From the NCBI GenBank assembly GCA_002269645.1, contig NIVC01002591.1, positions 58,645 to 122,644 of the forward strand: 64,000 bases of DNA, read 5' to 3'. Position 1 is the stretch's first letter; each line of letters begins with the position of its first letter. The DNA is from Macrostomum lignano (lineage: Eukaryota). This document shows positions 30,176 to 57,129 of the stretch, piece by piece. The notes beneath the pieces were generated by a model. That model was not told the origin of the DNA. It searched no databases and saw only the letters and a program-made list of their open reading frames with translations. Position numbers and translations under genes: made by a program.

Positions 30176-30206
<31 letters not shown>

Positions 30207-31766: not shown

Positions 31767-31811
<45 letters not shown>

Positions 31812-31878: not shown

Positions 31879-31927
<49 letters not shown>

Positions 31928-32028: not shown

Positions 32029-32091
<63 letters not shown>

Positions 32092-34709: not shown

Positions 34710-34779
34710 GGAATTATCTGCTTTTTTATCTGATGCCAGTTTGGTTGCTTAGCTGGAGACTACCTGTATTGATTGTCCC

Positions 34780-35525
34780 AGATCCTCACTTGCTGTTCCA
34801 GCCTCCCAAATCCTCAGTTGCTTTGCCAGCCTCCCAGATCCTCAGTTGCTTTGCCAGCCTCCCAGATCCTCAGTTGCTGGGCCAGCCTCCCAGATCCTCA
34901 GTTGCTGGGCCAGCCTCCCAGATCCTCAGTTGCTGGGCCAGCCTCCCAAATCCTCAGTTGCTTTGCCAGCCTCCTAGATCCTCAGTTGTTTTGCCAGCCT
35001 CCCAGATCCTCAGTTGCTGGGCCAGCCTCCCAGATCCTCAGTTGCTGGGCCAGCCTCCCAAATCCTCAGTTGCTGGGCCAGCCTCCCAAATCCTCAGTTG
35101 CTTTGCCAGCCTCCCAGATCCTCAGTTGCTGGGCCAGCCTCCCAGATCCTCAGTTGCTGGGCCAGCCTCCCAAATCCTCAGTTGCTTTGCCAGCCTCCCA
35201 GATCCTCAGTTGCTGGGCCAGCCTCCCAAATCCTCAGTTACTTTGCCAGCCTCCCAGATCCTCAGTTGCTGGGCCACCAGCCTCCCAGAGTGACAGTTGC
35301 TGGGCCAGCCAGCCTTCCAGAGTGTCAGTTTGCTGGGTCAGCCAGCCTTCCAGAGTGTCAGTTTGCTGGGCCAGCCTCCCAGATCCTCAGTTGCTGGGCC
35401 ACCAGCCTCCCAGAGTGACAGTTGCTGGGCCACCAGCCTCCCAGAGTGTCAGTTTGCTGGGCCAGCCAGCCTTCCAGAGTGTCAGTTTGCTGGGCCAGCC
35501 TCCCAGATCCTCAGTTGCTGGGCCA
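34780..35525. repeat. 28-bp minisatellite (CCTCCCAGATCCTCAGTTGCTGGGCCAG), locus 1, just 3' of the HERC stop
   Basis: Tandem repetition; the same family occurs at 43.6 and 46.1 kb. Confidence 0.93.
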
Positions 35526-36153
35526 CCGACGCCACTTTCCCAGCCCTTATAGCCAGCGCAAAAGCATTACAACACTCCGGTTGGAAAAGGTGAAGATATT
35601 AACAAACATGTTTGCATAGGATATGATACACTACTCAAAGTAGTTGACAACAAACGAGTTATTTTTGCCTTGGCCATAAACTCTTCTTAAATATTTTAAA
35701 TAAAATCAATCTGGTGCTGCTTGTTATTTTGATATTCTCAAGCTTATGAATTTTTTCTGTTGTAAGCGATAAATTTAGCGAATTGGCTTAACAAACGCGC
35801 CTTGTGTTCTCCTGAAGTAGTACAAGGGGTGTGTACTTTTATTTTTCTATTTCTAAGTATAAAATTTGTTAATTTAACTTTTTTATCTACCGCTTTGTGA
35901 TGCCTGACTTGATGTGTGCGCATCTTGAATTATATTTTCAAAAATAAATTTGATGTATCTGAGCTGACAGTGTGGCCGAATAAATGTCCCGACTATTTGA
36001 CCTGCTTTCGTCTTTCTCTTAACCCAATTTCGTTATTCAAATATAGTTCAAGTTGTCACGGCGTCAGCAATTTAATGATATTATTGAAACCCTATAATTG
36101 CTAAAATTATGAAATTGTCTTTTAGCTCAATATGTTGCCTATCTGCCTTTAAT

Positions 36154-39100
36154 TGTCAGTTTGGCTACCAATATTACCATCTAGTGTCAGTTTGGCTACC
36201 AATTTTACCCTCTAGTGTCAGTTTGGCTACCAATTTTAGCCTCTAGTGTCAGTTTGGCTACCAATTTTACCCTCTAGTGTCAGTTTGGCTACCAATATTA
36301 CCATCTAGTGTCAGTTTGGCTACCAATTTTAGCCTCTAGTGTCAGTTTGGCTACCAATATTACCATCTAGTGTCAGTTTGGCTACCAATTTTAGCCTCTA
36401 GTGTCAGTTTGGCTACCAATTTTACCCTCTAGTGTCAGTTTGGCTACCAATTTTACCCTCTAGTGTCAGTTTGGCTACTAATTTTACCCTCTAGTGTCAG
36501 TTTGGCTACCATTTTACCCTCTAGTGTCAGTTTGGCTACCTATTTTACCCTCTAGTGTCAGTTTGGCTACCTATTTTACCCTCTAGTGTCAGTTTGGCTA
36601 CCAATTTTACCCTCTAGTGTCAGTTTGGCTACCAATTTTACCCTCTAGTGTCAGTTTGGCTACCAATTTTACCATCTAGTGTCAGTTTGGCTACCAATTT
36701 TACCCTCTAGTGTCAGTTTGGCTACCAATTTTACCCTCTAGTGTCAGTTTGGCTACCAATTTTACCCTCTAGTGTCAGTTTGGCTACCAATTTTACCCTC
36801 TAGTGTCAGTTTGGCTACCAACTTTAGCCTCTAAGTGTCAGTTTGGCTACCATTTTACCCTCTAGTGTCAGTTTGGCTACCTATTTTACCCTCTAGTGTC
36901 AGTTTGGCTACCAATTTTACCCTCTAGTGTCAGTTTGGCTACCAATTTTACCCTCTAGTGTCAGTTTGGCTACCAATTTTACCATCTAGTGTCAGTTTGG
37001 CTACCAATTTTACCCTCTAGTGTCAGTTTGGCTACCAATTTTACCCTCTAGTGTCAGTTTGGCTACCAATTTTACCCTCTAGTGTCAGTTTGGCTACCAA
37101 TTTTACCCTCTAGTGTCAGTTTGGCTACCAATTTTACCCTCTAGTGTCAGTTTGGCTACCAACTTTAGCCTCTAAGTGTCAGTTTGGCTACCATTTTACC
37201 CTCTAGTGTCAGTTTGGCTACCTATTTTACCCTCTAGTGTCAGTTTGGCTACCAATTTTACCCTCTAGTGTCAGTTTGGCTACCAATTTTACCCTCCAGT
37301 GTCAGTTTGGCTACCAATTTTACCCTCTAGTGTCAGTTTGGCTACCAATTTTACCCTCCAGTGTCAGTTTGGCTACCAATTTTACCCTCTAGTGTCAGTT
37401 TGGCTACCAATTTTACCCTCTAGTGTCAGTTTGGCTACCAATTTTACCCTCTAGTGTCAGTTTGGCTACCAATTTTACCCTCTAGTGTCAGTTTGGCTAC
37501 CAATTTTAACCTCTAGTGTCAGTTTGGCTACCAATTTTACCCTCTAGTGTCAGTTTGGCTACCAATTTTACCCTCTAGTGTCAGTTTGGCTACCAATTTT
37601 ACCCTCTAGTGTCAGTTTGGCTACCAATTTTACCCTCTAGTGTCAGTTTGGCTACCAATTTTACCCTCTCGTGTCAGTTTGGCTACCAATTTTACCCTCT
37701 AGTGTCAGTTTGGCTACCAATTTTACCCTCTAGTGTCAGTTTGGCTACTAATTTTACCCTCTATTGTCAACTTGACTACCAATTTTACCCTCTAGTGTCG
37801 ACTTGACTACCAATTTTACCCTCTCGTGTCAGTTTGGCTACCAATTTTACCCTCTAGTGTCAGTTTGGCTACCAATTTTACCCTCTAGTATCAACTTGAC
37901 TACCAATTTTACCAAACAGTGTCAGTTTGGCTACCAATTTTACCCTCTAGTGTCAGTTTGGCTACCAATTTTACCCTCTAGTGTCAGTTTGGCTACCAAT
38001 TTTACCCTCCAGTGTCAGTTTGGCTACTAATTTTACCCTCTATTGTCAACTTGACTACCAATTTTACCCTCTAGTGTCGACTTGACTACCAATTTTACCC
38101 TCTCGTGTCAGTTTGGCTACCAATTTTACCCTCTAGTGTCAGTTTGGCTACCAATTTTACCCTCTAGTGTCAGTTTGGCTACCAATTTTACCCTCTAGTG
38201 TCAGTTTGGCTTCCAATTTTACCCTCAAGTGTCAGTTTGGCTACCAATTTTACCCTCTAGTGTCAGTTTGGCTACCAATTTTACCCTCTAGTGTCAGTTT
38301 GGCTACCAATTTTACCCTCTAGTGTCAGTTTGGCTACCAATTTTACCCTCCAGTGTCAGTTTGGCTACTAATTTTACCCTCTAGTGTCAGTTTGGCTACC
38401 AATTTTACCCTCCAGTGTCAGTTTGGCTACCAATTTTACCCTCTAGTGTCAGTTTGGCTACCAATTTTACCCTCCAGTGTCAGTTTGGCTACTAATTTTA
38501 CCCTCTATTGTCAACTTGACTACCAATTTTACCCTCTAGTGTCGACTTGACTACCAATTTTACCCTCTCGTGTCAGTTTGGCTACCAATTTTACCCTCTA
38601 GTGTCAGTTTGGCTACCAATTTTACCCTCTAGTATCAACTTGACTACCAATTTTACCAAACAGTGTCAGTTTGGCTACCAATTTTACCATCTAGTGTCAG
38701 TTTGGCTACCAATTTTACCCTCTAGTGTCAGTTTGGCTACCAATTTTACCCTCTAGTGTCAGTTTGGCTACCAATTTTACCCTCTAGTGTCGGTTTGGCT
38801 ACCAATTTTACCCTCAAGTGTCAGTTTGGCTACCAATTTTACCCTCTAGTGTCGGTTTGGCTACCAATTTTACCCTCTGGTGTCAGTTTGGCTACCAATT
38901 TTACCCTCTAGTGTCAGTTTGGCTACCAATTTTACCCTCTAGTGTCAGTTTGGCTACCAATTTTTCCCTCCAGTGTCAGTTCGGCTACCAATTTTTCCCT
39001 CCAGTGTCAGTTCGGCTACCAGTTTTGCCCTCCCGTGTCAGTTCGGCTACCAATTTTGCCCTCCCGTGTCAGTTTGGCTACCAATTTTTCCCTCTAGTGT

Positions 39101-39280
39101 CAGTTTGGCTACCAATTTTACCCTCTAGTGTCAGTTTGGCTACCAATTTTTCCCTCCAGTGTCAGTTCGGCTACCAGTTTTGCCTTCCCGTGTCAGTTTG
39201 GCTACCAATTTTACCCTCTAGTGTCAGTTTGGCTTCCAATTTTACCCTCTAGTGTCAGTTTGGCTACCAATTTTACCCTG
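36154..39280. repeat. 31-bp satellite (TGTCAGTTTGGCTACCAATTTTACCCTCTAG), ~100 copies
   Basis: Period of 31; recurring private variants show block duplications. Confidence 0.97.
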
Positions 39281-39749
39281 CAGCCCTCTAATACCAGTTT
39301 TGGCTTACATTTTCTCGGAAAAATGACAATTCAAAGTCACTTCATCCGTATACCTGAGTAATGATGACAGTCAAAGCCATTTATTAACAAAACCTGTTCA
39401 ATTTTGATCACAGCACCCACACTGCCTTGCGCTAACTATGTTGTTTAGATTCATGTCTTGAACCTGCAGGCTACATGCAGAGTTTGCCTTTCCACACCAG
39501 CATATTAAAGAGCATTATTTTATTTAATGGCCCTGTTTATGATTTTTGTTATGATAAATAAATGAAAATTGCTGCCAGAACTCGCCCATCGCTGAAAGCA
39601 TGCTGTTTTCTTTTGAGTAGGCTGTCTACGATAAAAAAAAGTACAAAAGTTTGATTTGCATTTTCAATTTATTTGTCCATTAATGGTTTCTAGGATGCTT
39701 TCTGGGCGACTTTACGAGCTCAGATGTTTTCTCAGGATTGATGCATTTC

Positions 39750-42700
39750 TAGTCAGCCATCTTGTCAGCAGGAATTGGTGTGCAATGCATTTCTTGTCAG
39801 CAGGAATTGTTGTGCAATGCATTCCTTGTCAGCAGGAATTGGTGTGCAATGCATTTCTAGTCAGCCATCTTGTCAGCAGGAATTGGTGTGCAATGCATTT
39901 CTTGTCAGCAGGAATTGGTGTGCAATGCATTCCTTGTCAGCAGGAATTGGTGTACAATGCATTCCTTGTCAGCAGGAATTGGTGTACAATGCATTCCTTG
40001 TCAGCAGGAATTGGTGTGCAATGCATTCCTTGTCAGCAGGAATTGGTGTACAATGCATTCCTTGTCAGCAGGAATTGGTGTGCAATGCATTCCTTGTCAG
40101 CAGGAATTGGTGTGCAATGCATTTCTAGTCAGCCGGAATTGGTGTGCAATGCATTCCTTGTCAGTAGGAATTGGTGTGCAATGCATTTCTTGTCAGCAGG
40201 AATTGGTGTACAATGCATTCCTTGTCAGCAGGAATTGGTGTGCAATGCATTCCTTGTCAGCAGGAATTGGTGTGCAATGCATTCCTTGTCAGCAGGAATT
40301 GGTGTGCAATGCATTCCTTGTCAGCAGGAATTGGTGTGCAATGCATTCCTTGTCAGCAGGAATTGGTGTGCAATGCATTCCTTGTCAGTAGGAATTGGTG
40401 TGCAATGCATTCCTTGTCAGCAGGAATTGGTGTGCAATGCATTCCTTGTCAGCAGGAATTGGTGTGCAATGCATTTCTTGTCAGCAGGAATTGGTGTGCA
40501 ATGCATTTCTAGTCAGCCATCTTGTCAGCAGGAATTGGTGTGCAATGCATTCCTTGTCAGCAGGAATTGGTGTGCAATGCATTTCTTGTCAGCAGGAATT
40601 GGTGTGCAATGCATTTCTTGTCAGCAGGAATTGGTGTGCAATGCATTCCTTGTCAGCAGGAATTGGTGTGCAATGCATTTCTTGTCAGCAGGAATTGGTG
40701 TACAATGCATTCCTTGTCAGCAGGAATTGGTGTGCAATGCATTCCTTGTCAGCAGGAATTGGTGTGCAATGCATTTCTTGTCAGCAGGAATTGGTGTGCA
40801 ATGCATTCCTTGTCAGCAGGAATTGGTGTGCAATGCATTTCTAGTCAGCCATCTTGTCAGCAGGAATTGGTGTGCAATGCATTCCTTGTCAGCAGGAATT
40901 GGTGTGCAATGCATTTCTTGTCAGCAGGAATTGGTGTGCAATGCATTTCTTGTCAGCAGGAATTGGTGTACAATGCATTCCTTGTCAGCAGGAATTGGTG
41001 TGCAATGCATTCCTTGTCAGCAGGAATTGGTGTGCAATGCATTCCTTGTCAGCAGGAATTGGTGTGCAATGCATTCCTTGTCAGCAGGAATTGGTGTGCA
41101 ATGCATTCCTTGTCAGCAGGAATTGGTGTGCAATGCATTTCTTGTCAGCCATCTTGTCAGCAGGAATTGGTGTGCAATGCATTCCTTGTCAGCAGGAATT
41201 GGTGTGCAATGCATTCCTTGTCAGCAGGAATTGGTGTGCAATGCATTCCTTGTCAGCCGGAATTGGTGTGCAATGCATTCCTTGTCAGCAGGAATTGGTG
41301 TACAATGCATTCCTTGTCAGCAGGAATTGGTGTGCAATGCATTCCTTGTCAGCAGGAATTGGTGTGCAATGCATTCCTTGTCAGCAGGAATTGGTGTGCA
41401 ATGCATTCCTTGTCAGCAGGAATTGGTGTGCAATGCATTCCTTGTCAGCAGGAATTGGTGTGCAATGCATTCCTTGTCAGCAGGAATTGGTGTGCAATGC
41501 ATTCCTTGTCAGCAGGAATTGGTGTGCAATGCATTTCTTGTCAGCAGGAATTGGTGTACAATGTATTCCTTGTCAGCAGGAATTGGTGTGCAATGCATTC
41601 CTTGTCAGCAGGAATTGGTGTGCAATGCATTCCTTGTCAGCAGGAATTGGTGTGCAATGCATTTCTTGTCAGCAGGAATTGGTGTGCAATGCATCCCTTG
41701 TCAGCAGGAATTGGTGTGCAATGCATTTCTTGTCAGCAGGAATTGGTGTACAATGCATTCCTTGTCAGCAGGAATTGTTGTGCAATGCATTCCTTGTCAG
41801 CAGGAATTGGTGTGCAATGCATTCCTTGTCAGCCATCTTGTCAGCAGGAATTGTTGTGCAATGCATTCCTTGTCAGCCATCTTGTCAGCAGGAATTGGTG
41901 TGCAATGCATTCCTTGTCAGCAGGAATTGTTGTGCAATGCATTCCTTGTCAGCAGGAATTGGTGTGCAATGCATTCCTTGTCAGCAGGAATTGGTGTGCA
42001 ATGCATTCCTTGTCAGCAGGAATTGTTGTGCAATGCATTCCTTGTCAGCAGGAATTGGTGTGCAATGCATTCCTTGTCAGCAGGAATTGGTGTGCAATGC
42101 ATTCCTTGTCAGCAGGAATTGGTGTACAATGCATTCCTTGTCAGCAGGAATTGGTGTGCAATGCATTCCTTGTCAGCAGGAATTGGTGTGCAATGCATTC
42201 CTTGTCAGCAGGAATTGGTGTGCAATGCATTTCTTGTCAGCAGGAATTGGTGTACAATGCATTCCTTGTCAGCAGGAATTGGTGTGCAATGCATTCCTTG
42301 TCAGCAGGAATTGGTGTGCAATGCATTCCTTGTCAGCAGGAATTGGTGTGCAATGCATTCCTTGTCAGCAGGAATTGGTGTGCAATGCATTTCTTGTCAG
42401 CAGGAATTGGTGTACAATGCATTCCTTGTCAGCAGGAATTGGTGTGCAATGCATTCCTTGTCAGCAGGAATTGGTGTGCAATGCATTTCTTGTCAGCAGG
42501 AATTGGTGTGCAATGCATTCCTTGTCAGCAGGAATTGGTGTGCAATGCATTCCTTGTCAGCCATCTTGTCAGCAGGAATTGGTGTGCAATGCATTCCTTG
42601 TCAGCAGGAATTGGTGTGCAATGCATTCCTTGTCAGCAGGAATTGGTGTGCAATGCATTCCTTGTCAGCAGGAATTGGTGTGCAATGCATTCCTTGTCAG

Positions 42701-42780
42701 CAGGAATTGGTGTGTAATGCATTCCTTGTCAGCAGGAATTGGTGTGCAATGCATTCCTTGTCAGCAGGAATTGGTGTACA
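39750..42780. repeat. 32-bp satellite (GTCAGCAGGAATTGGTGTGCAATGCATTCCTT), ~90-95 copies
   Basis: Period of 32; the unit has no plus-strand stop codon, hence the 685-1053-aa pseudo-ORFs. Confidence 0.97.
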
Positions 42781-43021
42781 TGTGCATTCAGTCACACGTA
42801 CATTTTCTACATTGTAAAACATTCCAAGATGTGCGGTATTGCTTGGGATACTGTCAAAAAAACATTAAGCATTGTGTCCATTTTCGAATTAATAAATATG
42901 TATATATTTGATTAGCTACTCAATAATAAATCGCTCCATAATCTCTTAATTAAATAAGTAAATAATAGTTCCGTGATCAAACTGCGCGCAATCAATTCGA
43001 TTCAAGTAGAGAATGTGTGCA

Positions 43022-46000
43022 TTAATTAAAGTTCTCATAAATCGACGGCAGCAGCAGCTCCAGCAGGCAAATACCTGTCACATTCTCGATGGTTAATGTG
43101 TTGGTCCGATGATGAGTCACCAGTCGTTCCAGGCTCTGGTGCCAGATGCCATTCTTGGGATCTACCGAGTACTGCTGGCTGCCAGTGGAACCCGATACCC
43201 GCTGCTGGATGATCACGTGATAGGCCTCGGCTCGCTGCCATCGGATGGACAGGACGAGCTTTTCGCCGCTCTGCCTGATTAGGAAGGCGCCCGGCTGACT
43301 CCGGCGGAGTAGCCGCTCCGCTGACCATCGGTCCAGGTGATCGTGCACCAGTTGCTGGCAGCGGGAGGCCACGGAGTCTGCCGGGCCACCCAACGGGTAG
43401 GAGACCGGCCGGTGTCGCAGAAAGGCGGTCAGGCAGGTGCGGTCCAGCTGCTGATTGCAGTGGTCGCAGTGGTAGCCCTGCGTATTGGTGGCGGTTGGGT
43501 TGGTTTGGGATTGACGCCATCAGAGCTGCGGGCTGTCGTGTGCTTCTTAACTGGTGCTGATCGGGTGAGACAATTCCAAGGTCACAACTTAGTAGGTCCC
43601 CTCCCCGATCCACAGTTGCTGGGCCAGCCTCCCATATCCTCAGTTGCTGGGCCAGCCTCCCAGATCCCCAGTTGCTGGGCCAGCCTCCCAGATCCCCAGT
43701 TGCTGGACCAGCCTCCCAGATCCCCAGTTGCTGGGCCACCAGCCTCCCAGACCCTCAGTTGCTGGGCCACTAGCCTCCCAGATCCCCAGTTGCTGGGCCA
43801 CCAGCCTCCCAGACCCTCAGTTGCTGGGCCACTAGCCTCCCAGATCCCCAGTTGCTGGGCCACCAGCCTCCCAGACCCTCAGTTGCTGGGCCACTAGCCT
43901 CCCAGATCCCCAGTTGCTGGGCCACTAGCCTCCCAGATCCCCAGTTGCTGGGCCAGCATCCCAGATCCCCAGTTGCTGGGCCAGCCTCCCAGATCCTCAG
44001 TTGCTGGGCCAGCCTCTCAGATCCTCAGTTGCTGGGCCAGCATCCCAGATCCCCAGTTGCTGGGCCAGCCTCCCAGATCCTCAGTTGCTGGGCCAGCCTC
44101 CCAGATCCTCAGTTGCTGGGCCAGCCTCCCAGATCCCCCAGTTGCTGGGCTAGCCTCCCAGATCCCCAGTTGCTGTGCCAGCCTCCCAGATCCACAGTTG
44201 CTGGGCCAGCCTCCCCGATCCACAGTTGCTGGGCCAGCCTCCCAGATCCCCAGTTGCTGGGCCAGCCTCCCAGACCCTCAGTTGCTGGGCCACTAGCCTC
44301 CCAGATCCTCAGTTCTTGGGCCACTTAAACCTCCTTCTTGGATGCACTGCATGTGCTCTATTGAGTTCCCAGGATGTCAGTTCAGTGAGAAGTAAAAATT
44401 GTCTGATTCCTTTTGCTGTGAATTCATAAGCGTGCAGTTCTCCTCCAAGAAATTTCCCACCGATTAAAGGTTCGATAAACCAAAGGGACAAAATTTCTGA
44501 TTCATAAATTGTGCCAACTTTACACAGTAATTATTTCGCTTTGATGTGATGTGTTTTTTCTCTTCCGTCTTTGATAAATCGGAAAAAGGCATTCAAAAGA
44601 TTCAAAAGAAAAAATAATCACCTGCGCCCTTGCCCATCAATTGAAAAATTTTTGTCCCAGCAATTTCGCATAGAAAACTGCTGTGAGTGGTCTCAAATCT
44701 CTCCAAGCATGTCGAAATTGCTTCTTTCCTAAAACGGAACTTCTTTGGAAAGATAATTGTCGAAAAACAGGCAAAGAGCGGCAACTTTCTGAAGGCGGAT
44801 TCGAATAGAAAAGTCTATAAAATGGACTCGGGTCAGAAGCAATTTTTCCGCACCAAGATCTCCAAAAAGTTCTTGCAAAGCAGCCATCATTCTCCCGTAG
44901 CGGAAGAAAGCCATGAACTTCAGGAAACTGCAGGCTGCGATGCTGCTGGTCTGCCTGACTGCGGCTGCTCAGCAGCGGGCTGCCGCCCTGCCAGCTGGCG
45001 GATCATCGAGTGCCCCGGTAAGCTGCCTTTGAGGCTGCAGTTTAGTTGCTGGGGACTACTGGCTCTTGTTGGTTTTTGCAAAGGGAACTGCTGGCGTCCC
45101 TTGGTGCTAAATCCTCTGGTGCTGGCGCCCCCTGTTGCTGGCGCCCCTTGGTGCTGGCGCCCCCTGGTGCTGGCGCCCCTTGGTCCTGGCGCCCCCTGGT
45201 GCTGGCGCCCCTTGGTCCTGGCGCCCCCTGGTGCTGGAGCCCCCTGGTGCTGGCGCCCCCTGGTGCTGGCGCCCCCTGTTGCTGGAGCCCCCTGGTGCTG
45301 GCGCCCCCTGGTGCTGGTGCCCCCTGGTGCTGGCGCCCCCTGGTGCTGGCGCCCCCTGGTGCTGGCGCCCCCTGGTGCTGGCGCCCCCTGGTGCTGGCGC
45401 CCCCTGGTGCTGGCGCCCCCTGGTGCTGGCGCCCCCTGGTGCTGGCGCCCCCTGGTGCTGGCGCCCCCTGGTGCTAAAGCCCCTGGTGCTAAAGCCCCTG
45501 GTGCTAAAACCCCTAGTGCTAAAACCCCTGTTGCTAAAACCCCTGGTGCTAAAACCCCTAGTGCTAAAACCCCTAGTGCTAAAGCCCCTGGTGCTAAAAC
45601 CCCTGGTGCTAAAACCCCTGGTTCAATAAAAATCTTCACTTCATTTCTCCTCAAACATTTCAGCAGCCCAGCTCGGCCAGTCCCGCGGCCACGCAGATGC
45701 CGCAGCCGGAGCAGCCGCGCCTGGACGATCAGCTCAGGGCCACGCGATTCCAGCTGTACAAGAGGTGCACCAGCGTCTTCCACCCAATGGCCTGCTTCGG
45801 AATTTGGCAGCTGTGACTTCGCTGCGTCACAGCCGCTCTGCATCCGAATTTGATGAGCAGCCGAATTGGACTGCATCAAGCGTGATGACGATTGAAAGCA
45901 TCGCGAATATTGTGCTTGTTTTTTAGACCTTTAAACGCTTTTCAGTCTCTTACTACGAGTTATTTAGACCCGTGACAGTTTTAATAGAAAGGAATTTTGC

Positions 46001-49000
46001 AAATAAACGATTATCCATACAGTTTGGTCGGGTTTATGGCAGCAAATCAGTTCATAATTGGATATTAGTTTGTGTAACGCCAGATCAGTGCTACACTATC
46101 GTAGCTGCTGTCTCAGTAAGTAACTGGGCCAGCCTCCCTGATCCCCAGTTGCTGGGCCAGCCTCCCAGATCCTCAGTTGCTGGACCAGCCTCCCAGATCC
46201 TCAGTTGCTGGGCCAGCCTCCCAGAGTGTCAGTTTCTTGGCCAGCCTCCCAGATCCTCAGTTGCTGGGCCAGCCTCCCAGACCCTCAGTTGCTGGGCCAA
46301 CCTCCCAGACCCTCAGTTGCTGGGCCAGCCTCCAAGATCCTCAGTTGCTGGACCAGCCTCCTAGATCCTCAGTTGCTGGGCCAGCCTCCCAGAGTGTCAG
46401 TTGCTGGGCCAGCCTCCCAGAGTGTCAGTTTCTGGGCGAACCTCCCAGACCCTCAGTTGCTCTACCAGACTCACCAGACCTTCAGACCTCCCAGACCGCC
46501 CAGCTCACCTGAAAGTACAGCCCGGCAAAGGTCTCCCGGCACCGGGAGCACTCGCTGCCCTCCTCAAAGGTGACCCGTCGAAACCGGTGCCCGCCGCTGT
46601 TCCAGCCGTCTGGCAGGTTGGCCGCGCGCACCTCCAGCAGCTGAGTCCACAGGCTGGCGCCGACACCAGCCGACAGCTTCTTGGCTCCCGGACGGCTAAA
46701 CTGCACCAGCCCCTTGCCTGACTGCTTCAGCTGGAGGCCGCCCGGCTCACCGGCTCTGCACTCCAGTTGAAGATCGTTTTCGTACAGCGAAACGTCGAAT
46801 AGAAATGCCCAGGGCTGCTGGGACGAACCGTTCGAGGATGCCGCAGGCGTGGCCACAATGAGCTGCCGGTCGGTCAGCAGGCAGAAGCACTCTTTCTGCA
46901 CCAACGCTCGCTGCTCCTTGCCCAGTGTAGCTCGGAACTGACCATCGCCTCTGTGCAGGCCGACATTCTCCAGCTTAGTAAGATGCTCTGGTAGGCCTTC
47001 GATTGACTGCAGAATCTGCCTAGTAGCCGCTTCCTGCTCCGAGTAGCGCTTGCGCTCGTTCAGGTGGCTGAGCAGGCGGCGGCACTCCACCACAGCAAGT
47101 TCCACCTGCGGTTGAAGGAGAGGGCGGGTCCGAGATGATTCTATGGTTTGAGAAGATTTCCGAGATGATTCTATGGTTTGAGAAGATTTCCGAGATGATT
47201 CTATAGTTCTAGAAGATCCCAGAGATGATTCTCTGGTTTTGGAAGATTCCCGAGATAATTCTCCTGGTTTTAGAAGATTCCCGAGATAATTCTCCTGGTT
47301 TTAGAAGATTCCCGAGATAATTCTCCTGGTTTTAGAAGATTCCCGAGATAATTCTCCTGGTTTTAGAAGATTCCCGAGATAATTCTCCTGGTTTTAGAAG
47401 ATTCCAGAGATGATTCTATGTTTCTAGGAGATTCCCAAGGTGATTGATTCTATGGGTCTAGGAGATACCCGAGAAGATTCTATAGTTCTAGAAGATTCCA
47501 GAGATGATTCTCTGGTTTTGGAAGATTCCCGAGATAATTCTCCTGGTTTTAGAAGATTCCAGAGACGATTCTATGGGTCTAAAAAATTCCCGAGATAATT
47601 CTCTAGTTTTTGGGGATTCCGGAGATGATTCAATGGTTTTAAGGGGGAGATTCCGGTAAAGACTTTGCAAGGGATTCCCAACGGACCCACTATCACAGGA
47701 TGTTCAGCGGCACTGCTACTCTGATTCGGACGGGTTAAGCTACGACAGCAACCGTACTGTATCCTCACCGAATTAGCCGCTTGTTCAGAGATCGTCGCCA
47801 ACTCTTTTTCAGCCGTTCTGTGCAGCCTCTCGAACAGTATCTGATAGTTGAACATCTGCTTGGACGGAGAGTCGTACAAGATGCTAAAGGACTCCGCGTT
47901 GAAGTGCCGCTCCAGCAGTTCCAGTTGGCGTCGCAACTGCGGCTGCTGCTGGAAGGCCTCCTCCATCTTGGCCTTGGCCAGAGGGTAGTCCGGGTAGTAC
48001 TTGGAGTAGACTGCCGACAGTCTGGGCTTCACTTGGAGAAACATCGAGCCAAGATTTGTGCAGAAATTGGCAGCGGATTTCGACTCGGCGAGGCTGTCTA
48101 GTTGCTGCTTGAAATACTCGTGCACCTGAAGCAGATGCTCCGTGTGCTTGAACGTCGAGTCCAGTAGGTCGGAGCTCCACTCTGACAGGGGACCGCGAAG
48201 TTCCCCGTGGAATTTCAATAGTAGCGACAGGCGATCAACCAGCTGAGCTTGAAGATGACAGATCTCCGAGACGATGTTCTCCAGTTGGGCGGCAGGAGTT
48301 GAGGCGGCGGCTGCTGGAGTCTCCGGCTCCGAGTAGATGAAATCCGATTGCCTGCGAGAGGCGCAGCTCAACGGCTGGTAGTCTAAAGATGCCACTGATG
48401 GCATCCGCTCGTTGGCCGGATTTGGCTGTTTTAATTAGTAAATGATAAATGTTGTTATGTAGAAGGTAAGATAACATGACATTCGCTGGCAATCAAGGCG
48501 CAACGCCTTCGGCGAGGAAGAAGATGCGAAATAGACACAGGGGTAGATGGGGAATAGACACTGGGTAGATGGGGAATAGACTTAGGTTAGATGGGGAATA
48601 GACACTGGGTAGATGGGGAATAGACTTAGGTTAGATGGGGAATAGACTTAGGTTAGATGGGGAATAGACACTGGGTAGATAAGGAATATACACTGGGTAG
48701 ATGGGGAGTAGACACAGGGTAGATGGAGAATAGATACAGGGTAGATGGGGAATAGACACAGGGGTATATGAGGAATAGACACAGAGTAGATGGGGAATAG
48801 ACACAGAGTAGATGGGGAATAGACACAGGGGTAGATGTGGAATAGACACAGGGGTATATGGGGAATAGACACAGGGGTATATGGGGAATAGACACAGAGT
48901 AGATGGGGAATAGACACAGGGGTAGGCAGGGAATAGACGCAGGGTAGGCAGGGAATAGACGCAGGGTAGAAGGGGAGTAGACAGGGTAGATGAGAGTCCC

Positions 49001-50047: not shown

Positions 50048-53000
50048 AGATTTGGCGCTCACTGACTCAGATTTGGCGCTCCCAGTCTCAGATTTGGCGC
50101 TTCTCTGACTCAGATTTGGTACCCCTCTGTCTCAGATTTGGTACCCCTCTGACTCAGATTTGGCGCTCCTCTGTCTCAGATTTGGCGCCCCTCTGACTCA
50201 GATTTGGCGCCCCTCTGTCTCAGATTTGGCGCTCCTCTATCTCAGATTTGGCGCTCCTCTGACTCAGATTTGGCGCTCCTCTGACTCAGATTTGGCGCTC
50301 CTCTATCTCAGATTTGGCGCCCCTCTGACTCAGATTTGGCGCTCCTCTGACTCAGATTTGGTACCCCTCTGTCTAAGATTTGGCGCCCCTCTGTCTCAGA
50401 TTTGGTACCCTCTGTCTCAGATTTGGCGCCCCTCTGTCTCAGATTTGGTACCCCTCTGTCTCAGATTTGGCGCCCCTCTGTCTCAGATTTGGCGCCCCTC
50501 TGACTCAGATTTGGCGCCCCTCTGACTCAGATTTGGTACCCCTCTGTCTCAGATTTGGCGCCCCTCTGTCTCAGATTTGGCGCCCCTCTGACTCAGATTT
50601 GGCGCCCCTCTGACTCAGATTTGGCGCCCCTCTGTCTCAGATTTGGCGCTCCTCTATCTCAGATTTGGCGCCCCTCTGACTCAGATTTGGCGCTCCTCTG
50701 ACTCAGATTTGGCGCTCCTCTGACTCAGATTTGGCGCTCCTCTGACTCAGATTTGGCGCCCCTCTGTCTCAGATTTGGCGCTCCTCTGACTCAGATTTGG
50801 CGCTCCTCTGACTCAGATTTGGCGCTCCTCTATCTCAGATTTGGCGCCCCTCTGACTCAGATTTGGCGCTTCTCTGACTCAGATTTGGCGCTCCTCTGAC
50901 TCAGATTTGGCGCTCCTCTATCTCAGATTTGGCGCCCCTCTGACTCAGATTTGGCGCTCCTCTGACTCAGATTTGGCGCTTCTCTGACTCAGATTTGGTA
51001 CCCCTCTGTCTCAGATTTGGTACCCCTCTGACTCAGATTTGGCGCTCCTCTGTCTCAGATTTGGCGCCCTCTGACTCAGATTTGGCGCCCCTCTGTCTCA
51101 GATTTGGCGCTCCTCTATCTCAGATTTGGCGCTCCTCTGACTCAGATTTGGCGCTCCTCTGACTCAGATTTGGCGCTCCTCTATCTCAGATTTGGCGCCC
51201 CTCTGACTCAGATTTGGCGCTCCTCTGACTCAGATTTGGTACCCCTCTGTCTCAGATTTGGCGCCCCTCTGTCTCAGATTTGGTACCCCTCTGTCTCAGA
51301 TTTGGCGCCCCTCTGTCTCAGATTTGGTACCCCTCTGTCTCAGATTTGGCGCCCCTCTGTCTCAGATTTGGCGCCCCTCTGACTCAGATTTGGCGCCCCT
51401 CTGACTCAGATTTGGTACCCCTCTGTCTCAGATTTGGCGCCCCTCTGTCTCAGATTTGGCGCCCCTCTGACTCAGATTTGGCGCCCCTCTGACTCAGATT
51501 TGGCGCCCCTCTGTCTCAGATTTGGCGCTCCTCTATCTCAGATTTGGCGCCCCTCTGACTCAGATTTGGCGCTCCTCTGACTCAGATTTGGCGCTCCTCT
51601 ATCTCAGATTTGGCGCTCCTCTGACTCAGATTTATCGCCCCTCTGTCTCAGATTTGGCGCTCCTCTGACTCAGATTTGGCGCTCCTCTGACTCAGATTTG
51701 GCGCTCCTCTATCTCAGATTTGGCGCCCCTCTGACTCAGATTTGGCGCTTCTCTGACTCAGATTTGGCGCTCCTCTATCTCAGATTTGGCGCCCCTCTGA
51801 CTCAGATTTGGCGCTCCTCTGACTCAGATTTGGCGCCCCTCTGACTCAGATTTGGCGCTCCTCTGACTCAGATTTGGCGCTCCTCTGACTCAGATTTGGC
51901 GCCCCTCTGTCTCAGATTTGGCGCCCCTCTGTCTCAGATTTGGCGCCCCTCTGACTCAGATTTGGCGCCCCTCTGACTCAGATTTGGCGCTCCTCTATCT
52001 CAGATTTGGCGCCCCTCTGACTCAGATTTGGCGCTCCTCTGACTCAGATTTGGTACCCCTCTGTCTCAGATTTGGCGCCCCTCTGTCTCAGATTTGGTAC
52101 CCCTCTGTCTCAGATTTGGCGCCCCTCTGTCTCAGATTTGGTACCCCTCTGTCTCAGATTTGGCGCCCCTCTGTCTCAGATTTGGCGCCCCTCTGACTCA
52201 GATTTGGCGCCCCTCTGACTTAGATTTCGTACCCCTCTGTCTCAGATTTGGCGCCCCTCTGACTCAGATTTGGCGCCCCTCTGACTCAGATTTGGCGCCC
52301 CTCTGACTTAGATTTCGTACCCCTCTGTCTCAGATTTGGCGCCCCTCTGTCTCAGATTTGGCGCCCCTCTGACTCAGATTTGGCGCCCCTCTGACTCAGA
52401 TTTGGTACCCCTCTGTCTCAGATTTGGCGCCCCTCTGTCTCAGATTTGGCGCCCCTCTGACTCAGATTTGGCGCCCCTCTGACTCAGATTTGGCGCCCCT
52501 CTGTCTCAGATTTGGCGCTCCTCTATCTCAGATTTGGCGCCCCTCTGTCTCAGATTTGGCGCCCCTCTGTCTCAGATTTGGTACCCCTCTGTCTCAGATT
52601 TGGCGCCCCTCTGTCTCAGATTTGGCGCCCCTCTGACTCAGATTTGGCGCCCCTCTGACTTAGATTTCGTACCCCTCTGTCTCAGATTTGGCGCCCCTCT
52701 GACTCAGATTTGGCGCCCCTCTGACTCAGATTTGGTACCCCTCTGTCTCAGATTTGGCGCTCCTCTGACTCAGATTTGGTACCCCTCTGTCTCAGATTTG
52801 GCGCCCCTCTGTCTCAGATTTGGTACCCCTCTGTCTCAGATTTGGCGCCCCTCTGACTCAGATTTGGCGCTCCTCTATCTCAGATTTGGCGCTCCTCTGA
52901 CTCAGATTTGGCGCCCCTCTGTCTCAGATTTGGCGCTCCTCTGACTCAGATTTGGCGCTCCTCTGACTCAGATTTGGCGCTCCTCTGACTCAGATTTGGC

Positions 53001-56000
53001 GCCCCTCTGACTCAGATTTGGCGCTCCTCTGACTCAGATTTGGCGCTCCTCTGACTCAGATTTGGCGCCCCTCTGTCTCAGATTTGGCGCCCCTCTGTCT
53101 CAGATTTGGCGCCCCTCTGACTCAGATTTGGCGCCCCTCTGACTCAGATTTGGCGCTCCTCTATCTCAGATTTGGCGCCCCTCTGACTCAGATTTGGCGC
53201 TCCTCTGACTCAGATTTGGTACCCCTCTGTCTCAGATTTGGCGCCCCTCTGTCTCAGATTTGGTACCCCTCTGTCTCAGATTTGGCGCCCTCTGTCTCAG
53301 ATTTGGTACCCCTCTGTCTCAGATTTGGCGCCCCTCTGTCTCAGATTTGGCGCCCCTCTGACTCAGATTTGGCGCCCCTCTGTCTCAGATTTGGTACCCC
53401 TCTGTCTCAGATTTGGCGCCCCTCTGTCTCAGATTTGGCGCCCCTCTGACTCAGATTTGGCGCCCCTCTGACTTAGATTTCGTACCCCTCTGTCTCAGAT
53501 TTGGCGCTCCTCTATCTCAGATTTGGCGCTCCTCTGACTCAGATTTGGCGCTCCTCTATCTCAGATTTGGCGCCCCTCTGACTCAGATTTGGCGCTCCTC
53601 TGACTCAGATTTGGCGCTTCTCTGACTCAGATTTGGTACCCCTCTGTCTCAGATTTGGTACCCCTCTGACTCAGATTTGGCGCTCCTCTGTCTCAGATTT
53701 GGCGCCCTCTGACTCAGATTTGGCGCCCTCTGTCTCAGATTTGGCGCTCCTCTATCTCAGATTTGGCGCTCCTCTGACTCAGATTTGGCGCTCCTCTGAC
53801 TCAGATTTGGCGCTCCTCTATCTCAGATTTGGCGCCCTCTGACTCAGATTTGGCGCTCCTCTGACTCAGATTTGGTACCCCTCTGTCTCAGATTTGGCGC
53901 CCTCTGTCTCAGATTTGGTACCCCTCTGTCTCAGATTTGGCGCCCCTCTGTCTCAGATTTGGTACCCCTCTGTCTCAGATTTGGCGCCCTCTGTCTCAGA
54001 TTTGGCGCCCCTCTGACTCAGATTTGGCGCCCCTCTGACTCAGATTTGGTACCCCTCTGTCTCAGATTTGGCGCCCCTCTGTCTCAGATTTGGCGCCCCT
54101 CTGACTCAGATTTGGCGCCCCTCTGACTCAGATTTGGCGCCCCTCTGTCTCAGATTTGGCGCTTCTCTGACTCAGATTTGGTACCCCTCTGTCTCAGATT
54201 TGGTACCCCTCTGACTCAGATTTGGCGCTCCTCTGTCTCAGATTTGGCGCCCCTCTGACTCAGATTTGGCGCCCCTCTGTCTCAGATTTGGCGCTCCTCT
54301 ATCTCAGATTTTGCGCTCCTCTGACTCAGATTTGGCGCTCCTCTGACTCAGATTTGGCGCTCCTCTATCTCAGATTTGGCGCCCCTCTGACTCAGATTTG
54401 GCGCTCCTCTGACTCAGATTTGGTACCCCTCTGTCTAAGATTTGGCGCCCCTCTGTCTCAGATTTGGTACCCCTCTGTCTCAGATTTGGCGCCCCTCTGT
54501 CTCAGATTTGGTACCCCTCTGTCTCAGATTTGGCGCCCCTCTGTCTCAGATTTGGCGCCCTCTGACTCAGATTTGGCGCCCCTCTGACTCAGATTTGGTA
54601 CCCCTCTGTCTCAGATTTGGCGCCCCTCTGTCTCAGATTTGGCGCCCCTCTGACTCAGATTTGGCGCCCCTCTGACTCAGATTTGGCGCCCCTCTGTCTC
54701 AGATTTGGCGCTCCTCTATCTCAGATTTGGCGCCCCTCTGACTCAGATTTGGCGCTCCTCTGACTCAGATTTGGCGCTCCTCTGACTCAGATTTGGCGCT
54801 CCTCTGACTCAGATTTGGCGCCCCTCTGTCTCAGATTTGGCGCTCCTCTGACTCAGATTTGGCGCTCCTCTGACTCAGATTTGGCGCTCCTCTATCTCAG
54901 ATTTGGCGCCCCTCTGACTCAGATTTGGCGCTTCTCTGACTCAGATTTGGCGCTCCTCTGACTCAGATTTGGCGCTCCTCTATCTCAGATTTGGCGCCCC
55001 TCTGACTCAGATTTGGCGCTCCTCTGACTCAGATTTGGCGCTTCTCTGACTCAGATTTGGTACCCTCTGTCTCAGATTTGGTACCCCTCTGACTCAGATT
55101 TGGCGCTCCTCTGTCTCAGATTTGGCGCCCCTCTGACTCAGATTTGGCGCCCCTCTGTCTCAGATTTGGCGCTCCTCTATCTCAGATTTGGCGCTCCTCT
55201 GACTCAGATTTGGCGCTCCTCTGACTCAGATTTGGCGCTCCTCTGACTCAGATTTGGCGCTCCTCTATCTCAGATTTGGCGCTCCTCTGACTCAGATTTG
55301 GCGCCCCTCTGTCTCAGATTTGGCGCTCCTCTGACTCAGATTTGGCGCTCCTCTGACTCAGATTTGGCGCTCCTCTATCTCAGATTTGGCGCCCCTCTGA
55401 CTCAGATTTGGCGCTTCTCTGACTCAGATTTGGCGCTCCTTTGACTCAGATTTGGCGCTCCTCTATCTCAGATTTGGCGCCCCTCTATCTCAGATTTGGC
55501 GCCCCTCTGACTCAGATTTGGCGCTCCTCTGACTCAGATTTGGCGCCCCTCTGACTCAGATTTGGCGCTCCTCTGACTCAGATTTGGCGCTCCTCTGACT
55601 CAGATTTGGCGCCCCTCTGTCTCAGATTTGGCGCTCCTCTGACTCAGATTTGGCGCTCCTCTATCTCAGATTTGGCGCTCCTCTATCTCAGATTTGGCGC
55701 CCCTCTGACTCAGATTTGGCGCTTCTCCGACTCAGATTTGGCGCTCCTCTGACTCAGATTTGGCGCTCCTCTATCTCAGATTTGGCGCCCCTCTGACTCA
55801 GATTTGGCGCTCCTCTGACTCAGATTTGGCGCTTCTCTGACTCAGATTTGGTACCCCTCTGTCTCAGATTTGGTACCCCTCTGACTCAGATTTGGCGCTC
55901 CTCTGTCTCAGATTTGGCGCCCCTCTGACTCAGATTTGGCGCCCCTCTGTCTCAGATTTGGCGCTCCTCTATCTCAGATTTGGCGCTCCTCTGACTCAGA

Positions 56001-56582
56001 TTTGGCGCTCCTCTGACTCAGATTTGGCGCTCCTCTGACTCAGATTTGGCGCCCCTCTGACTCAGATTTGGCGCTCCTCTGACTCAGATTTGGTACCCCT
56101 CTGTCTCAGATTTGGCGCCCCTCTGTCTCAGATTTGGTACCCCTCTGTCTCAGATTTGGCGCCCCTCTGTCTCAGATTTGGTACCCCTCTGTCTCAGATT
56201 TGGCGCCCCTCTGTCTCAGATTTGGCGCCCCTCTGACTCAGATTTGGCGCCCCTCTGACTCAGATTTGGTACCCCTCTGTCTCAGATTTGGCGCCCCTCT
56301 GTCTCAGATTTGGCGCCCCTCTGACTCAGATTTGGCGCCCCTCTGACTCAGATTTGGCGCCCCTCTGTCTCAGATTTGGCGCTCCTCTATCTCAGATTTG
56401 GCGCCCCTCTGACTCAGATTTGGCGCTCCTCTGACTCAGATTTGGCGCTCCTCTATCTCAGATTTGGCGCTCCTCTGACTCAGATTTGGCGCCCCTCTGT
56501 CTCAGATTTGGCGCCCCTCTGTCTCAGATTTGGCGCCCCTCTGACTCAGATTTGGCGCCCCTCTGACTCAGATTTGGCGCCC
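50048..56582. repeat. 22-bp satellite (TCAGATTTGGCGCCCCTCTGTC and variants), ~6.5 kb, roughly 300 units
   Basis: Period of 22; a few variable positions; large internal block duplications. Confidence 0.97.
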
Positions 56583-57129
56583 CCATTAGCTAAACGCGGT
56601 ACAAAAAAACAGATTTCTCGATTTTCTCTCGATTTTCTCTGCTTTTAAAGCATGGCTACTAATAGCTTGAGCATAGTCGAGCACAGAGAGCGCTCAGCTG
56701 CGTGATGCCGACTTGGCTAGAGAGAAGGACAGCGAGGGAAAAGCAGAGGAACACAGGCAGCTGAGAGAGAGAGGGAGAGAGAGAGAGAGTGAGTGAATTT
56801 GTGGCGGTCCCGCGCGGCCCATTTCGTGCGACGGGGCCCGAGCGCATTTAAATTATTAATTCCCTTTTTTTCTCTGTCCCGCCGTGTCGCCGACTAAATA
56901 GAGAAGCCCCTAGAAAGCTTTCGTAGAAATTACCGAAAATACTCCTGTGCCGCAGTCCCTGCTCTATCCTTTCCTCTGTCGCTGTCTGCAGGCTTTATCC
57001 ATTTTCCCGCTTTTATGTCTTCGTCCGAATCTCTGGGATAAAAATTGTTCATTACAAAATTACCGAATCGCAGAAGGCGCTGTTTTTCTGTTTTTTTTGT
57101 CTGAAGGCGTCATTTTTGGATGTTAGTCG

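What the first reader, a model, noticed from the sequence alone, without database searches (positions are those of the whole stretch)
44913..45816. Hidden neuropeptide gene nested in a Vav intron: an elevenin-like ring in a somatostatin/AstC/MCH-like precursor layout
Seen: two short exons missed by the ORF track splice to MNFRKLQAAMLLVCLTAAAQQRAAALPAGGSSSAP-QPSSASPAATQMPQPEQPRLDDQLRATRFQLY-KR-CTSVFHPMACFGIWQL*. That is a signal peptide, spacer, dibasic site and one C-terminal peptide with two Cys. Established (recalled, not searched): elevenin/L11 peptides have a C-x8-C ring with VF(A/H)P followed by C-x-G-V/I, but usually sit just after the signal peptide. Allatostatin C (FNPISCF, C-x6-C), somatostatin and MCH (C-x8-C-WQV) sit at the precursor C-terminus. 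Inference: this peptide mixes these features (CT..VFHP..CxGI, FHPMACF, terminal WQL) and may be an undescribed cyclic neuropeptide informative about family relationships.
Basis: partly seen in the sequence, partly recalled or inferred. Interest (0 to 1): 0.85.

Follow-up and report, generated by a model that had tools for sequence, protein, structure and literature searches.

The report
Unannotated cyclic-peptide precursor gene in flatworm
A small, well-formed but unannotated two-exon gene sits inside an intron of a Vav-like gene of the flatworm Macrostomum lignano; it would encode a secreted precursor ending in a 16-residue disulfide-ring peptide, but whether it is expressed or conserved in other species could not be tested.

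Summary
Window 44913-45017 and 45664-45816 (+) splice in phase 0 (CCG|GTAAGC ... TTTCAG|CAG) into an 85-aa ORF. It has a signal-peptide-like N-terminus, a Pro/Ser/Ala/Gln spacer, K68-R69, then CTSVFHPMACFGIWQL and a stop.

The window is Macrostomum lignano NIVC01002591.1. The host is a CH-DH-PH-C1-SH2 (Vav-like) gene on the minus strand, and the candidate lies antisense in its last intron.

Intrinsic support is good:
- The exons are GC islands, with GC3 periodicity and best codon usage in the proposed frame.
- TATAAA lies at -97 and AATAAA at +186.
- A strict model scan finds only this model in the window and none in 150 shuffles.

Two other assembly copies carry the gene. One is intact with Q84R. 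The other has a 1-nt homopolymer deletion and a mutated acceptor. All copies are too similar (>99%) to test selection.

No homologue, annotation or transcript evidence was found.

On family: layout, the single phase-0 pro-region intron and the F-x-P...C-F motif resemble allatostatin-C, but the loop has 8 residues, not 6. The elevenin likeness is mainly the ring size. Likeness to MCH or somatostatin is not supported.

Best reading: a real orphan prohormone-like gene, confidence about 0.5.

The parts
44816..44822 (+). TATAAAA, candidate TATA box 97 nt upstream of the ATG
   Evidence: The chance of a TATAAA in a 120-nt window here is about 0.05. Promoter function is inferred.
44913..44987 (+). 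Codons 1-25, signal-peptide-like: MNFRK (n-region), LQAAMLLVCLTAAA (h-region), QQRAAA|LP (Ala at -3 and -1)
   Evidence: heuristic and hydropathy only. SignalP was not run.
44913..45017 (+). Exon 1 coding part (35 codons), ending at donor CCG|GTAAGC; phase 0
   Evidence: GC 0.657 against 0.454 upstream. Identical in copy 3.
45018..45663 (+). Phase-0 intron, 646 nt. It is filled by a 16-bp minisatellite (45116-45505) and a 45-bp repeat (45465-45622). The acceptor is a tandem TTTCAG|CAG.
   Evidence: The length differs between copies: 646, 799 and 826 nt. The verified introns of the Vav-like and HERC genes here also hold minisatellites and end in CAG.
45664..45759 (+). Exon 2, pro-region QPSSASPAATQMPQPEQPRLDDQLRATRFQLY, which includes an R-A-T-R motif at residues 60-63
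   Evidence: Processing is inferred.
45760..45765 (+). K68-R69 dibasic site
   Evidence: Identical in all three copies.
45766..45813 (+). Predicted mature peptide CTSVFHPMACFGIWQL: C70-C79 ring with 8 residues between the Cys, and no amidation signal. Monoisotopic mass with the disulfide is 1836.815.
   Evidence: Copy 3 has Q84R.
45814..45816 (+). Stop codon TGA
46002..46007 (+). AATAAA, candidate poly(A) signal 186 nt after the stop
   Evidence: Chance is about 0.23.
43478..46508 (-). Host intron: the last intron of the Vav-like gene, phase 0, which splits the C1 domain. The candidate lies antisense inside it.
   Evidence: The host exons are 49380-49012, 48425-47769, 47105-46509 and 43477-43022. 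Their product is exactly PAA56677.1.
43600..44323 (.). 28-bp minisatellite bordering the unique 1.8-kb unit on the left
46124..46461 (.). The same 28-bp minisatellite bordering the unit on the right

Best explanation
Window 44816-46007 (+), which is NIVC01002591.1:103460-104651, holds a real but unannotated two-exon gene of Macrostomum lignano. It lies antisense in the last intron of a Vav-like GEF gene.

Shown here:
- An intact 85-codon spliced ORF with consensus GT-AG signals.
- Exon-like base composition and codon periodicity.
- A TATA box and a poly(A) signal in the expected places.
- The same unit in two further assembly copies.

Inferred mechanism:
- The product enters the secretory pathway through a signal peptide of about 25 residues.
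- A prohormone convertase cuts after K68-R69, and perhaps after R-A-T-R63.
- C70 and C79 form a disulfide. This releases a non-amidated 16-residue cyclic peptide, CTSVFHPMACFGIWQL.
- The peptide acts as an intercellular signal (neuropeptide or peptide hormone), most likely through a rhodopsin-type GPCR.

Family. It works like the single-copy, C-terminal cyclic peptides of the allatostatin-C/somatostatin type. It shares their layout, their phase-0 pro-region intron and the F-x-P...C-F motif of allatostatin-C. Its 8-residue loop keeps it outside the family as defined. I treat it as an orphan, possibly a divergent allatostatin-C-type peptide.
For: - Sequence and splice signals.
- It is the only strict model in the window, and none appears in 150 shuffles or in the reversed sequence.
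- Exon GC is 0.66 against flanks of 0.29-0.51. GC3 is 0.79. The codon log-likelihood is +9.8 bits in frame, against -17 to -56 bits in four of the five other frames and about -4 in the other two.
- TATAAA at -97 and AATAAA at +186.
- The intron looks like the verified introns of neighbouring genes (minisatellite-filled, CAG acceptor, phase 0).
- Copy 3 (NIVC01000064.1) keeps the ATG, donor, acceptor, KR, both Cys and the stop. The 1.2 kb of unique sequence in the unit differs from it by 0.57%. Adjacent Vav-intron, 3'-flank and intergenic sequence differs by 3.5-7.8%.
- ASTC-type features taken from PMC9048919 and PMC8786951: a single peptide at the C-terminus, one phase-0 intron in the pro-region of spiralian ASTC genes, and F-x-P in the loop.
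- Permutation test against Manduca and Aplysia AstC: p = 0.00025 and 0.003.
Against: - There is no evidence of transcription.
- The GenBank annotation calls no gene here in any of the three copies. It does call products as short as 80 aa.
- The exact 85-aa sequence is absent from a collection of 15 billion proteins. That collection records ORFs as short as 31 aa and holds a transcript contig from a related organism.
- phmmer against 1.84 billion representatives gave only a spurious low-complexity hit. The word-based search, Pfam and a metagenome scan gave nothing.
- The only coding differences among the copies are one non-synonymous change (Q84R, copy 3) and a 1-nt deletion plus a lost acceptor AG (copy 2). 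As assembled, copy 2 keeps the frame only if a CAG 8 nt downstream is used.
- The low divergence of the unit extends to its non-coding parts, and divergence between copies is mosaic. It is therefore not evidence of selection on the ORF.
- The signal peptide is only moderately hydrophobic.
- ASTC's defining 6-residue loop and its common Asn are missing.
Confidence: 0.5

Rival explanations
1. There is no functional gene. This is a chance open reading frame with splice-like signals in GC-rich unique intronic DNA between minisatellites, at most an untranslated or unstable antisense transcript.
For: - No annotation in three copies, although 80-aa products are annotated elsewhere.
- No exact or similar protein in very large collections.
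- Changes among the copies include a frameshifting deletion, a lost acceptor AG and a non-synonymous change, with no synonymous change.
- The ORF is short.
Against: - 0 of 150 shuffles give such a model, and it is unique in 128 kb of real strand sequence.
- Independent features agree with it: the exons are sharply bounded GC islands, GC3 and codon usage fit the proposed frame only, and TATA and AATAAA lie where expected.
- The 1-nt deletion in copy 2 sits in a C4 run. The same assembly has two single-nt deletions in G/C runs that break the conserved HERC ORF in this window, so it may be an assembly error.
- The acceptor change falls in a CAG|CAG tandem, so on its own it removes just one codon.
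Confidence: 0.3
2. It is a real secreted small peptide, but not a neuropeptide. It could be a gland, epidermal, reproductive or defence peptide with a C-terminal disulfide loop, released by the same kind of processing.
For: - The gene-model evidence is the same as for the best explanation.
- There is no detectable homology to any neuropeptide family.
- The peptide is very hydrophobic and aromatic, and is not amidated.
Against: - A single dibasic site directly before one C-terminal cyclic peptide, together with a phase-0 pro-region intron, is the layout described for SS/ASTC-type prohormones.
- The similarity to AstC loops is above permutation expectation.
Confidence: 0.14
3. It is a true elevenin (L11) orthologue whose peptide has moved to the C-terminus of the precursor. 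This is the reading the first reader emphasised.
For: - C-x8-C ring.
- Thr after the first Cys, Ala before the second, and C-x-G-I against C-R-G-V.
- Permutation p = 0.03.
Against: - Conserved I4, D5, F11, P13 and R16 are not kept in register. D5, R16 and P13 matter for receptor activation in Aplysia.
- There is no N-terminal extension before the first Cys.
- The peptide is at the far end of the precursor rather than after the signal peptide.
- A C-x8-C ring also occurs in EP/CCHamide.
Confidence: 0.06

Closest known systems
Allatostatin-C (ASTC/AstC) type precursors (PMC8786951, PMC9048919)
   Same: - One peptide copy at the extreme C-terminus after a basic site.
- Two Cys forming a loop.
- An F-x-P motif in the loop, and an aromatic residue right after the second Cys: VFHPMAC-F against YFNPISC-F (Manduca, recalled) and MFNVVAC-Y (Aplysia).
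- A non-amidated C-terminus.
- A single phase-0 intron in the pro-region, as reported for spiralian ASTC genes.
   Different: - The loop has 8 residues, not the 6 reported as invariant in protostomes.
- His replaces the common Asn.
- A six-residue tail (FGIWQL) follows the second Cys, where AstC has a single residue.
- No sequence-search or HMM link.
- The receptor is unknown.
- Allatostatin-type ligands had not been reported from flatworms as of PMC6114109.
Elevenin / L11 (PMC10175484)
   Same: - Eight residues between the two Cys.
- Thr after the first Cys and Ala before the second.
- Gly two residues after the second Cys, followed by an aliphatic residue.
   Different: - Lacks I4, D5 and R16.
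- F11 and P13 are shifted by one position.
- No N-terminal extension.
- The peptide is at the C-terminus of an 85-aa precursor. In Aplysia it lies directly after the signal peptide of a 151-aa precursor.
Excitatory peptide / CCHamide of lophotrochozoans (PMC12969411)
   Same: Two Cys with eight residues between them, and one peptide per precursor.
   Different: No GGN-amide or GxH-amide end and no amidation signal.
Somatostatin/urotensin-type (SSRP) and MCH precursors
   Same: A single cyclic peptide at the C-terminus and a phase-0 pro-region intron (SSRP genes, PMC9048919). MCH also has a C-x8-C ring and ends in WQV (recalled from memory).
   Different: - No W-K motif in the loop.
- Anchored similarity is no better than shuffled peptides (p = 0.97 for SST-14 and 0.68 for MCH).
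- In MCH, WQV follows the Cys directly. Here WQL comes three residues later.

Membership tests
Allatostatin-C type | Two Cys separated by six residues (invariant in protostomes) | tested here: not met
   The loop is C-TSVFHPMA-C, eight residues. The definition comes from PMC8786951 and PMC9048919.
Allatostatin-C type | A single peptide copy at the C-terminal end of the precursor, after a basic cleavage site | tested here: met
   KR, then the 16-mer, then the stop.
Allatostatin-C type | A phase-0 intron in the pro-region, the only intron in spiralian ASTC genes | tested here: met
   Exon 1 is 105 nt. The intron falls between codons 35 and 36, downstream of the signal peptide. The feature comes from PMC9048919, which notes that it does not separate ASTC from SS-type genes.
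Allatostatin-C type | Loop motifs: F-x-P in many members, Asn in most | tested here: inconclusive
   F-H-P is present and Asn is absent. Permutation p = 0.00025-0.003 against two AstC peptides. No HMM or cluster link.
Allatostatin-C type | Activates an ASTC/somatostatin-type GPCR | not testable with these tools
   This needs a receptor assay.
Elevenin | Two Cys with eight residues between them | tested here: met
   The definition comes from PMC10175484.
Elevenin | Conserved I4, D5, F11, P13, R16, G17, V18 (Aplysia numbering) | tested here: not met
   In the ungapped ring alignment only G17 is kept, and V18 becomes Ile. D5 and I4 fall on the KR site and upstream of it. R16 becomes Phe, and F11 and P13 are displaced by one position.
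Elevenin | Peptide directly after the signal peptide, followed by a long C-terminal part | tested here: not met
   The peptide occupies residues 70-85 of 85. The Aplysia layout is described.
EP/CCHamide | C-terminal amidation with a GGN or GxH motif | tested here: not met
   The product ends ...GIWQL-stop, with no Gly plus basic signal.
Somatostatin/urotensin-type (SSRP) | W-K motif inside the Cys loop | tested here: not met
   The loop TSVFHPMA has no W-K.
Generic neuropeptide prohormone | Signal peptide, convertase site, expression in secretory or neuronal cells, and a detectable mature peptide | tested here: inconclusive
   A signal-peptide-like N-terminus and KR are present. Expression and the mature peptide cannot be tested here.

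The most novel reading that the evidence does not exclude
The peptide is a genuine allatostatin-C/somatostatin-type ligand of a flatworm with an expanded 8-residue loop. That would be the first such ligand described in Platyhelminthes. It would show that the 'invariant' 6-residue protostome ASTC loop can change, producing an elevenin-sized ring by convergence or through shared ancestry of the cyclic peptide families.
Probability: 0.15. Interest if true: 0.6.

Novelty: new variant of a known kind. Interest (0 to 1): 0.45.

Why it matters
Flatworm neuropeptide catalogues are incomplete. As of 2018, allatostatin-type ligands had not been reported from flatworms, although allatostatin-like receptors had (PMC6114109).

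If this gene is real, it would add an orphan cyclic peptide to the M. lignano signalling repertoire and give a concrete ligand to test on orphan flatworm GPCRs. If it proves to be ASTC-related, it would show that loop size is not fixed in protostomes.

It also shows that short, intron-nested genes can be missed by transcript- and ORF-length-based annotation in a repeat-rich, recently duplicated genome. The practical value is modest until expression is shown.

Tried and rejected
1. Word-based homologue search with the precursor found nothing. I therefore could not survey homologues or receptors.
2. phmmer against 1.84 billion representatives gave one low-complexity bacterial hit, which I rejected.
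3. Pfam on the precursor gave nothing.
4. A JGI metagenome scan gave nothing.
5. A full-text search for peptide strings gave nothing.
Exon-level ORFs were not on record.
7. A search for paralogues in the window found none. Only the intron minisatellite recurs, at 62.4-63.1 kb.
8. I tried to test selection by comparing assembly copies. I reached copy 2 and copy 3 by reconstructing the HSP70, Vav-like and HERC proteins exactly. The unit is 99.4-99.6% identical across the copies, and divergence along the locus is mosaic, so the comparison has no power.
9. Rfam and tRNA scans of the window gave nothing.
10. The flatworm neuropeptide surveys by McVeigh (2009) and Koziol (2016) are not held in the library.
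11. MCH and somatostatin kinship is rejected: similarity is at shuffle level and the W-K motif is absent.
Full report
**What is there**

- An ATG at 44913 is preceded by an in-frame stop five codons upstream. It opens 35 codons that end at a consensus donor, CCG|GTAAGC.
- After 646 nt, the acceptor TTTCTCCTCAAACATTTCAG|CAG opens 50 more codons and a TGA at 45814-45816.
- The intron is phase 0. Most of it is a 16-bp minisatellite and a 45-bp repeat.
- The product is MNFRKLQAAMLLVCLTAAAQQRAAALPAGGSSSAP|QPSSASPAATQMPQPEQPRLDDQLRATRFQLY-KR-CTSVFHPMACFGIWQL.
- TATAAAA lies 97 nt upstream of the ATG, and AATAAA lies 186 nt after the stop.

**Organism and context**

Rfam and tRNA scans gave nothing. 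I identified the source by rebuilding the spliced HSP70 gene at 9300-6091 (-). Its 659-aa product is an exact match to Macrostomum lignano PAA56674.1.

The minus-strand ORFs around the finding carry CH, RhoGEF, C1 and SH2 domains. Joining them at four consensus, phase-0 junctions gives 692 aa (exons 49380-49012, 48425-47769, 47105-46509, 43477-43022). That is an exact match to PAA56677.1, BOX15_Mlig006464g1.

The window equals NIVC01002591.1:58645-122644 of GCA_002269645.1. The candidate lies antisense inside the host's last intron (43478-46508), which splits the C1 domain. The host has CH-DH-PH-C1-SH2 but no SH3 domains, so 'Vav-like' is the accurate name.

The unique 1.8-kb unit is bordered on both sides by the same 28-bp minisatellite.

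**Is it more than chance?**

I wrote a scan for complete models. Each model needs an ATG exon with a crude signal-peptide test, a GTRAG donor, a polypyrimidine-YAG acceptor, compatible phase, and [KR][KR]-C-x4-12-C within ten residues of the stop.
- On both strands of the real window it returns exactly one model, the candidate.
- It returns none in 150 shuffles that keep composition in 300-bp blocks, and none in the reversed sequence. With loose splice criteria, 8 of 150 shuffles give a model.

Independent features agree.
- The two exons have GC 0.66. The adjoining unique sequence has 0.45 (upstream), 0.51 and 0.29 (intron ends) and 0.42 (downstream).
- GC3 is 0.79 in the proposed frame, like the verified Vav-like, HSP70 and HECT exons (0.67-0.91).
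- A codon-usage log-likelihood trained on those exons is positive only in the proposed frame.
- The chance of the TATAAA is about 0.05, and of the AATAAA about 0.23.
- The intron resembles the verified introns nearby: minisatellite-filled, with a CAG acceptor.

**What could not be found**

- The precursor has no Pfam match.
- The word-based search found no relative.
- phmmer against 1.84 billion representatives returned only a low-complexity bacterial hit.
- JGI metagenomes hold no relative.
- The papers library does not contain its peptide strings.
- The exact 85-aa sequence is not in the 15-billion-protein collection. That collection records ORFs as short as 31 aa. It also holds a transcript contig (SRR24204641) whose HSP70 is about 90% identical in DNA to this one, so it comes from a related organism.
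- GenBank annotates no gene in this intron in any copy, although it does annotate an 80-aa product elsewhere.

These are mild negatives for expression. They are not decisive for a cell-restricted peptide gene.

**Other genomic copies**

M. lignano is a hidden tetraploid (PMC5704211, abstract listed), and the assembly holds this locus three times.

Copy 2 (NIVC01000065.1) was reached through the Vav-like paralogue PAA92047.1.
- It is 99.5-100% identical to the window across the region, introns included.
- In the unit it differs at five sites. Three are in the 5' flank. One is a 1-nt deletion in the CCCC run at 45010-45013, in the last codons of exon 1. One is A45662C, which destroys the acceptor AG.
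- The acceptor is a CAG|CAG tandem, so this change alone would only remove Gln36.
- With the deletion as well, the frame is kept only if a CAG 8 nt downstream is used (82 aa...SSSARSASP...).
- The deletion may be an assembly error. In this same window the conserved RCC1 region of the HERC gene needs two single-nucleotide insertions in G/C runs (about 29750 and 29885) to read through. GenBank accordingly annotates only the 587-aa C-terminal ORF, which my model matched exactly (PAA56676.1). Copy 3 has the two extra bases.

Copy 3 (NIVC01000064.1) was reached through HERC paralogue PAA92097.1.
- It keeps the ATG, the C4 run, the donor, the AG acceptor, KR, both Cys and the stop. It has one non-synonymous change, Q84R.
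- The unit differs from copy 3 by 7 substitutions in 1221 nt (0.57%). For comparison, Vav-like exon 4 differs by 1.1%, the adjoining intron by 3.5%, the 3' flank by 5.6% and intergenic DNA by 7.8%.
- But the unit's own non-coding parts are just as similar. Other blocks, such as HERC 28.3-32.1 kb including its introns, are nearly identical too. The pattern is therefore mosaic and is not a test of selection on the ORF.

KR and both Cys are conserved in all three copies, but that says little at this level of divergence.

**Comparison with known families**

Elevenin.
- Aplysia elevenin is RPRIDCTRFVFAPACRGVSA. It has two Cys eight residues apart, conserved I4, D5, F11, P13, R16, G17 and V18, and a peptide that follows the signal peptide (PMC10175484).
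- The candidate shares the ring size, the Thr after the first Cys, the Ala before the second, and G-I for G-V.
- It lacks I4, D5 and R16. F and P are one position out of register, and the peptide is at the other end of the precursor.
- Ring size alone is weak evidence, because lophotrochozoan EP/CCHamide also has C-x8-C. That family is amidated with a GGN end (PMC12969411).

Allatostatin-C.
- It is defined by two Cys six residues apart and one peptide per precursor (PMC8786951).
- Koch et al. add that many members carry F-x-P and most carry Asn in the loop. They report that the protostome loop is always six residues (ten in echinoderm SS1). They also report that all SS/ASTC-type genes share a phase-0 intron in the pro-region, which is the only intron in spiralian ASTC genes (PMC9048919).
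- The candidate meets the layout, the intron feature and F-x-P, and it ends the loop with ...A-C-F like ...S-C-F. It fails the loop size and lacks Asn.

Permutation test. I anchored each alignment on the second Cys and shuffled the non-Cys residues. The results were:

| Reference peptide | p |
|---|---|
| Manduca AstC (sequence recalled) | 0.00025 |
| Aplysia AstC | 0.003 |
| Aplysia elevenin | 0.03 |
| MCH (sequence recalled) | 0.68 |
| SST-14 (sequence recalled) | 0.97 |

The SSRP W-K motif is absent. McVeigh et al. (2018) state that allatostatin-type ligands had not been reported from flatworms (PMC6114109).

**Verdict**

- The gene model is well supported by intrinsic signals, at roughly 0.65-0.7 that it is a real gene.
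- There is no evidence of expression or of conservation between species.
- Its most likely function is a precursor of a secreted, disulfide-cyclised 16-mer that works like the single-copy C-terminal cyclic neuropeptides. Overall confidence in this reading is about 0.5.
- It cannot be filed as allatostatin-C (loop size fails) or as elevenin (conserved residues and layout fail). Allatostatin-C is the closer functional analogue.
- It is an interesting lead rather than a finding about the evolution of these families.

Noticed in passing
window 29735-29925 (HERC RCC1 exon, + strand): The conserved RCC1 reading frame shifts twice within 150 nt, at G/C homopolymer runs (CGGCCGG and CCCGGGCC). GenBank annotates only the 587-aa C-terminal ORF (PAA56676.1). 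Copy 3 has two extra bases here. This points to single-base deletion errors in the assembly, or to a decaying duplicate.
   Followed up: yes
window 463-2948 (+) and 9300-6088 (-): Two near-identical HSP70/HSC70 genes lie tail to tail as an inverted duplication. The same pair is present in all three assembly copies.
   Followed up: partly
window 27000-46050 compared with L007; window 1-11000 compared with L002 and L006: Divergence between the assembly copies is strongly mosaic. Some blocks are 100% identical, introns included (HERC 28.3-32.1 kb against copy 3; the Vav-like region against copy 2). They sit next to blocks that are 84-95% identical. This suggests gene conversion or mixed haplotype and homeologue assembly.
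   Followed up: partly
window 15856-18184 (-): Fragments of a non-LTR retrotransposon: a reverse-transcriptase ORF and two endonuclease (Exo_endo_phos_2) ORFs with broken frames.
   Followed up: partly
window 18217-19848 (+): A Bcl-2 family gene. Pfam Bcl-2 matches the ORF at 19495-19848, and the annotation gives a 291-aa product. Its intron holds a 64-bp/106-bp tandem repeat (18697-19538).
   Followed up: no
window 36154-42789, 50048-56583 and many introns: There is a very large minisatellite load: a 31-bp unit x101, a 32-bp unit x about 90, a 22-bp unit x298, and TGTC microsatellites in HERC introns. The 28-bp unit that flanks the candidate also occurs at 34776-35525. The candidate's intron repeat recurs at 62453-63060.
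   Followed up: partly
window 45660-45666; also HERC acceptor 28320-28325: There are tandem NAGNAG acceptors: CAG|CAG in the candidate and GAG|CAG in HERC. In copy 2 the upstream AG of the candidate's pair is lost, which alone would shift splicing by one codon.
   Followed up: yes
window 63081-63494 (+): An ORF whose end reads ...MGNCAAAYGVSCPEE, which looks like a myristoylation-type start. It may be the first exon of a gene running off the window. It has no Pfam match.
   Followed up: no
L005 (Logan SRR24204641 contig 48158): An intronless HSP70 transcript contig about 90% identical in DNA to the window's HSP70. It comes from a related organism, so related transcriptomes are present in the public collection.
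   Followed up: partly
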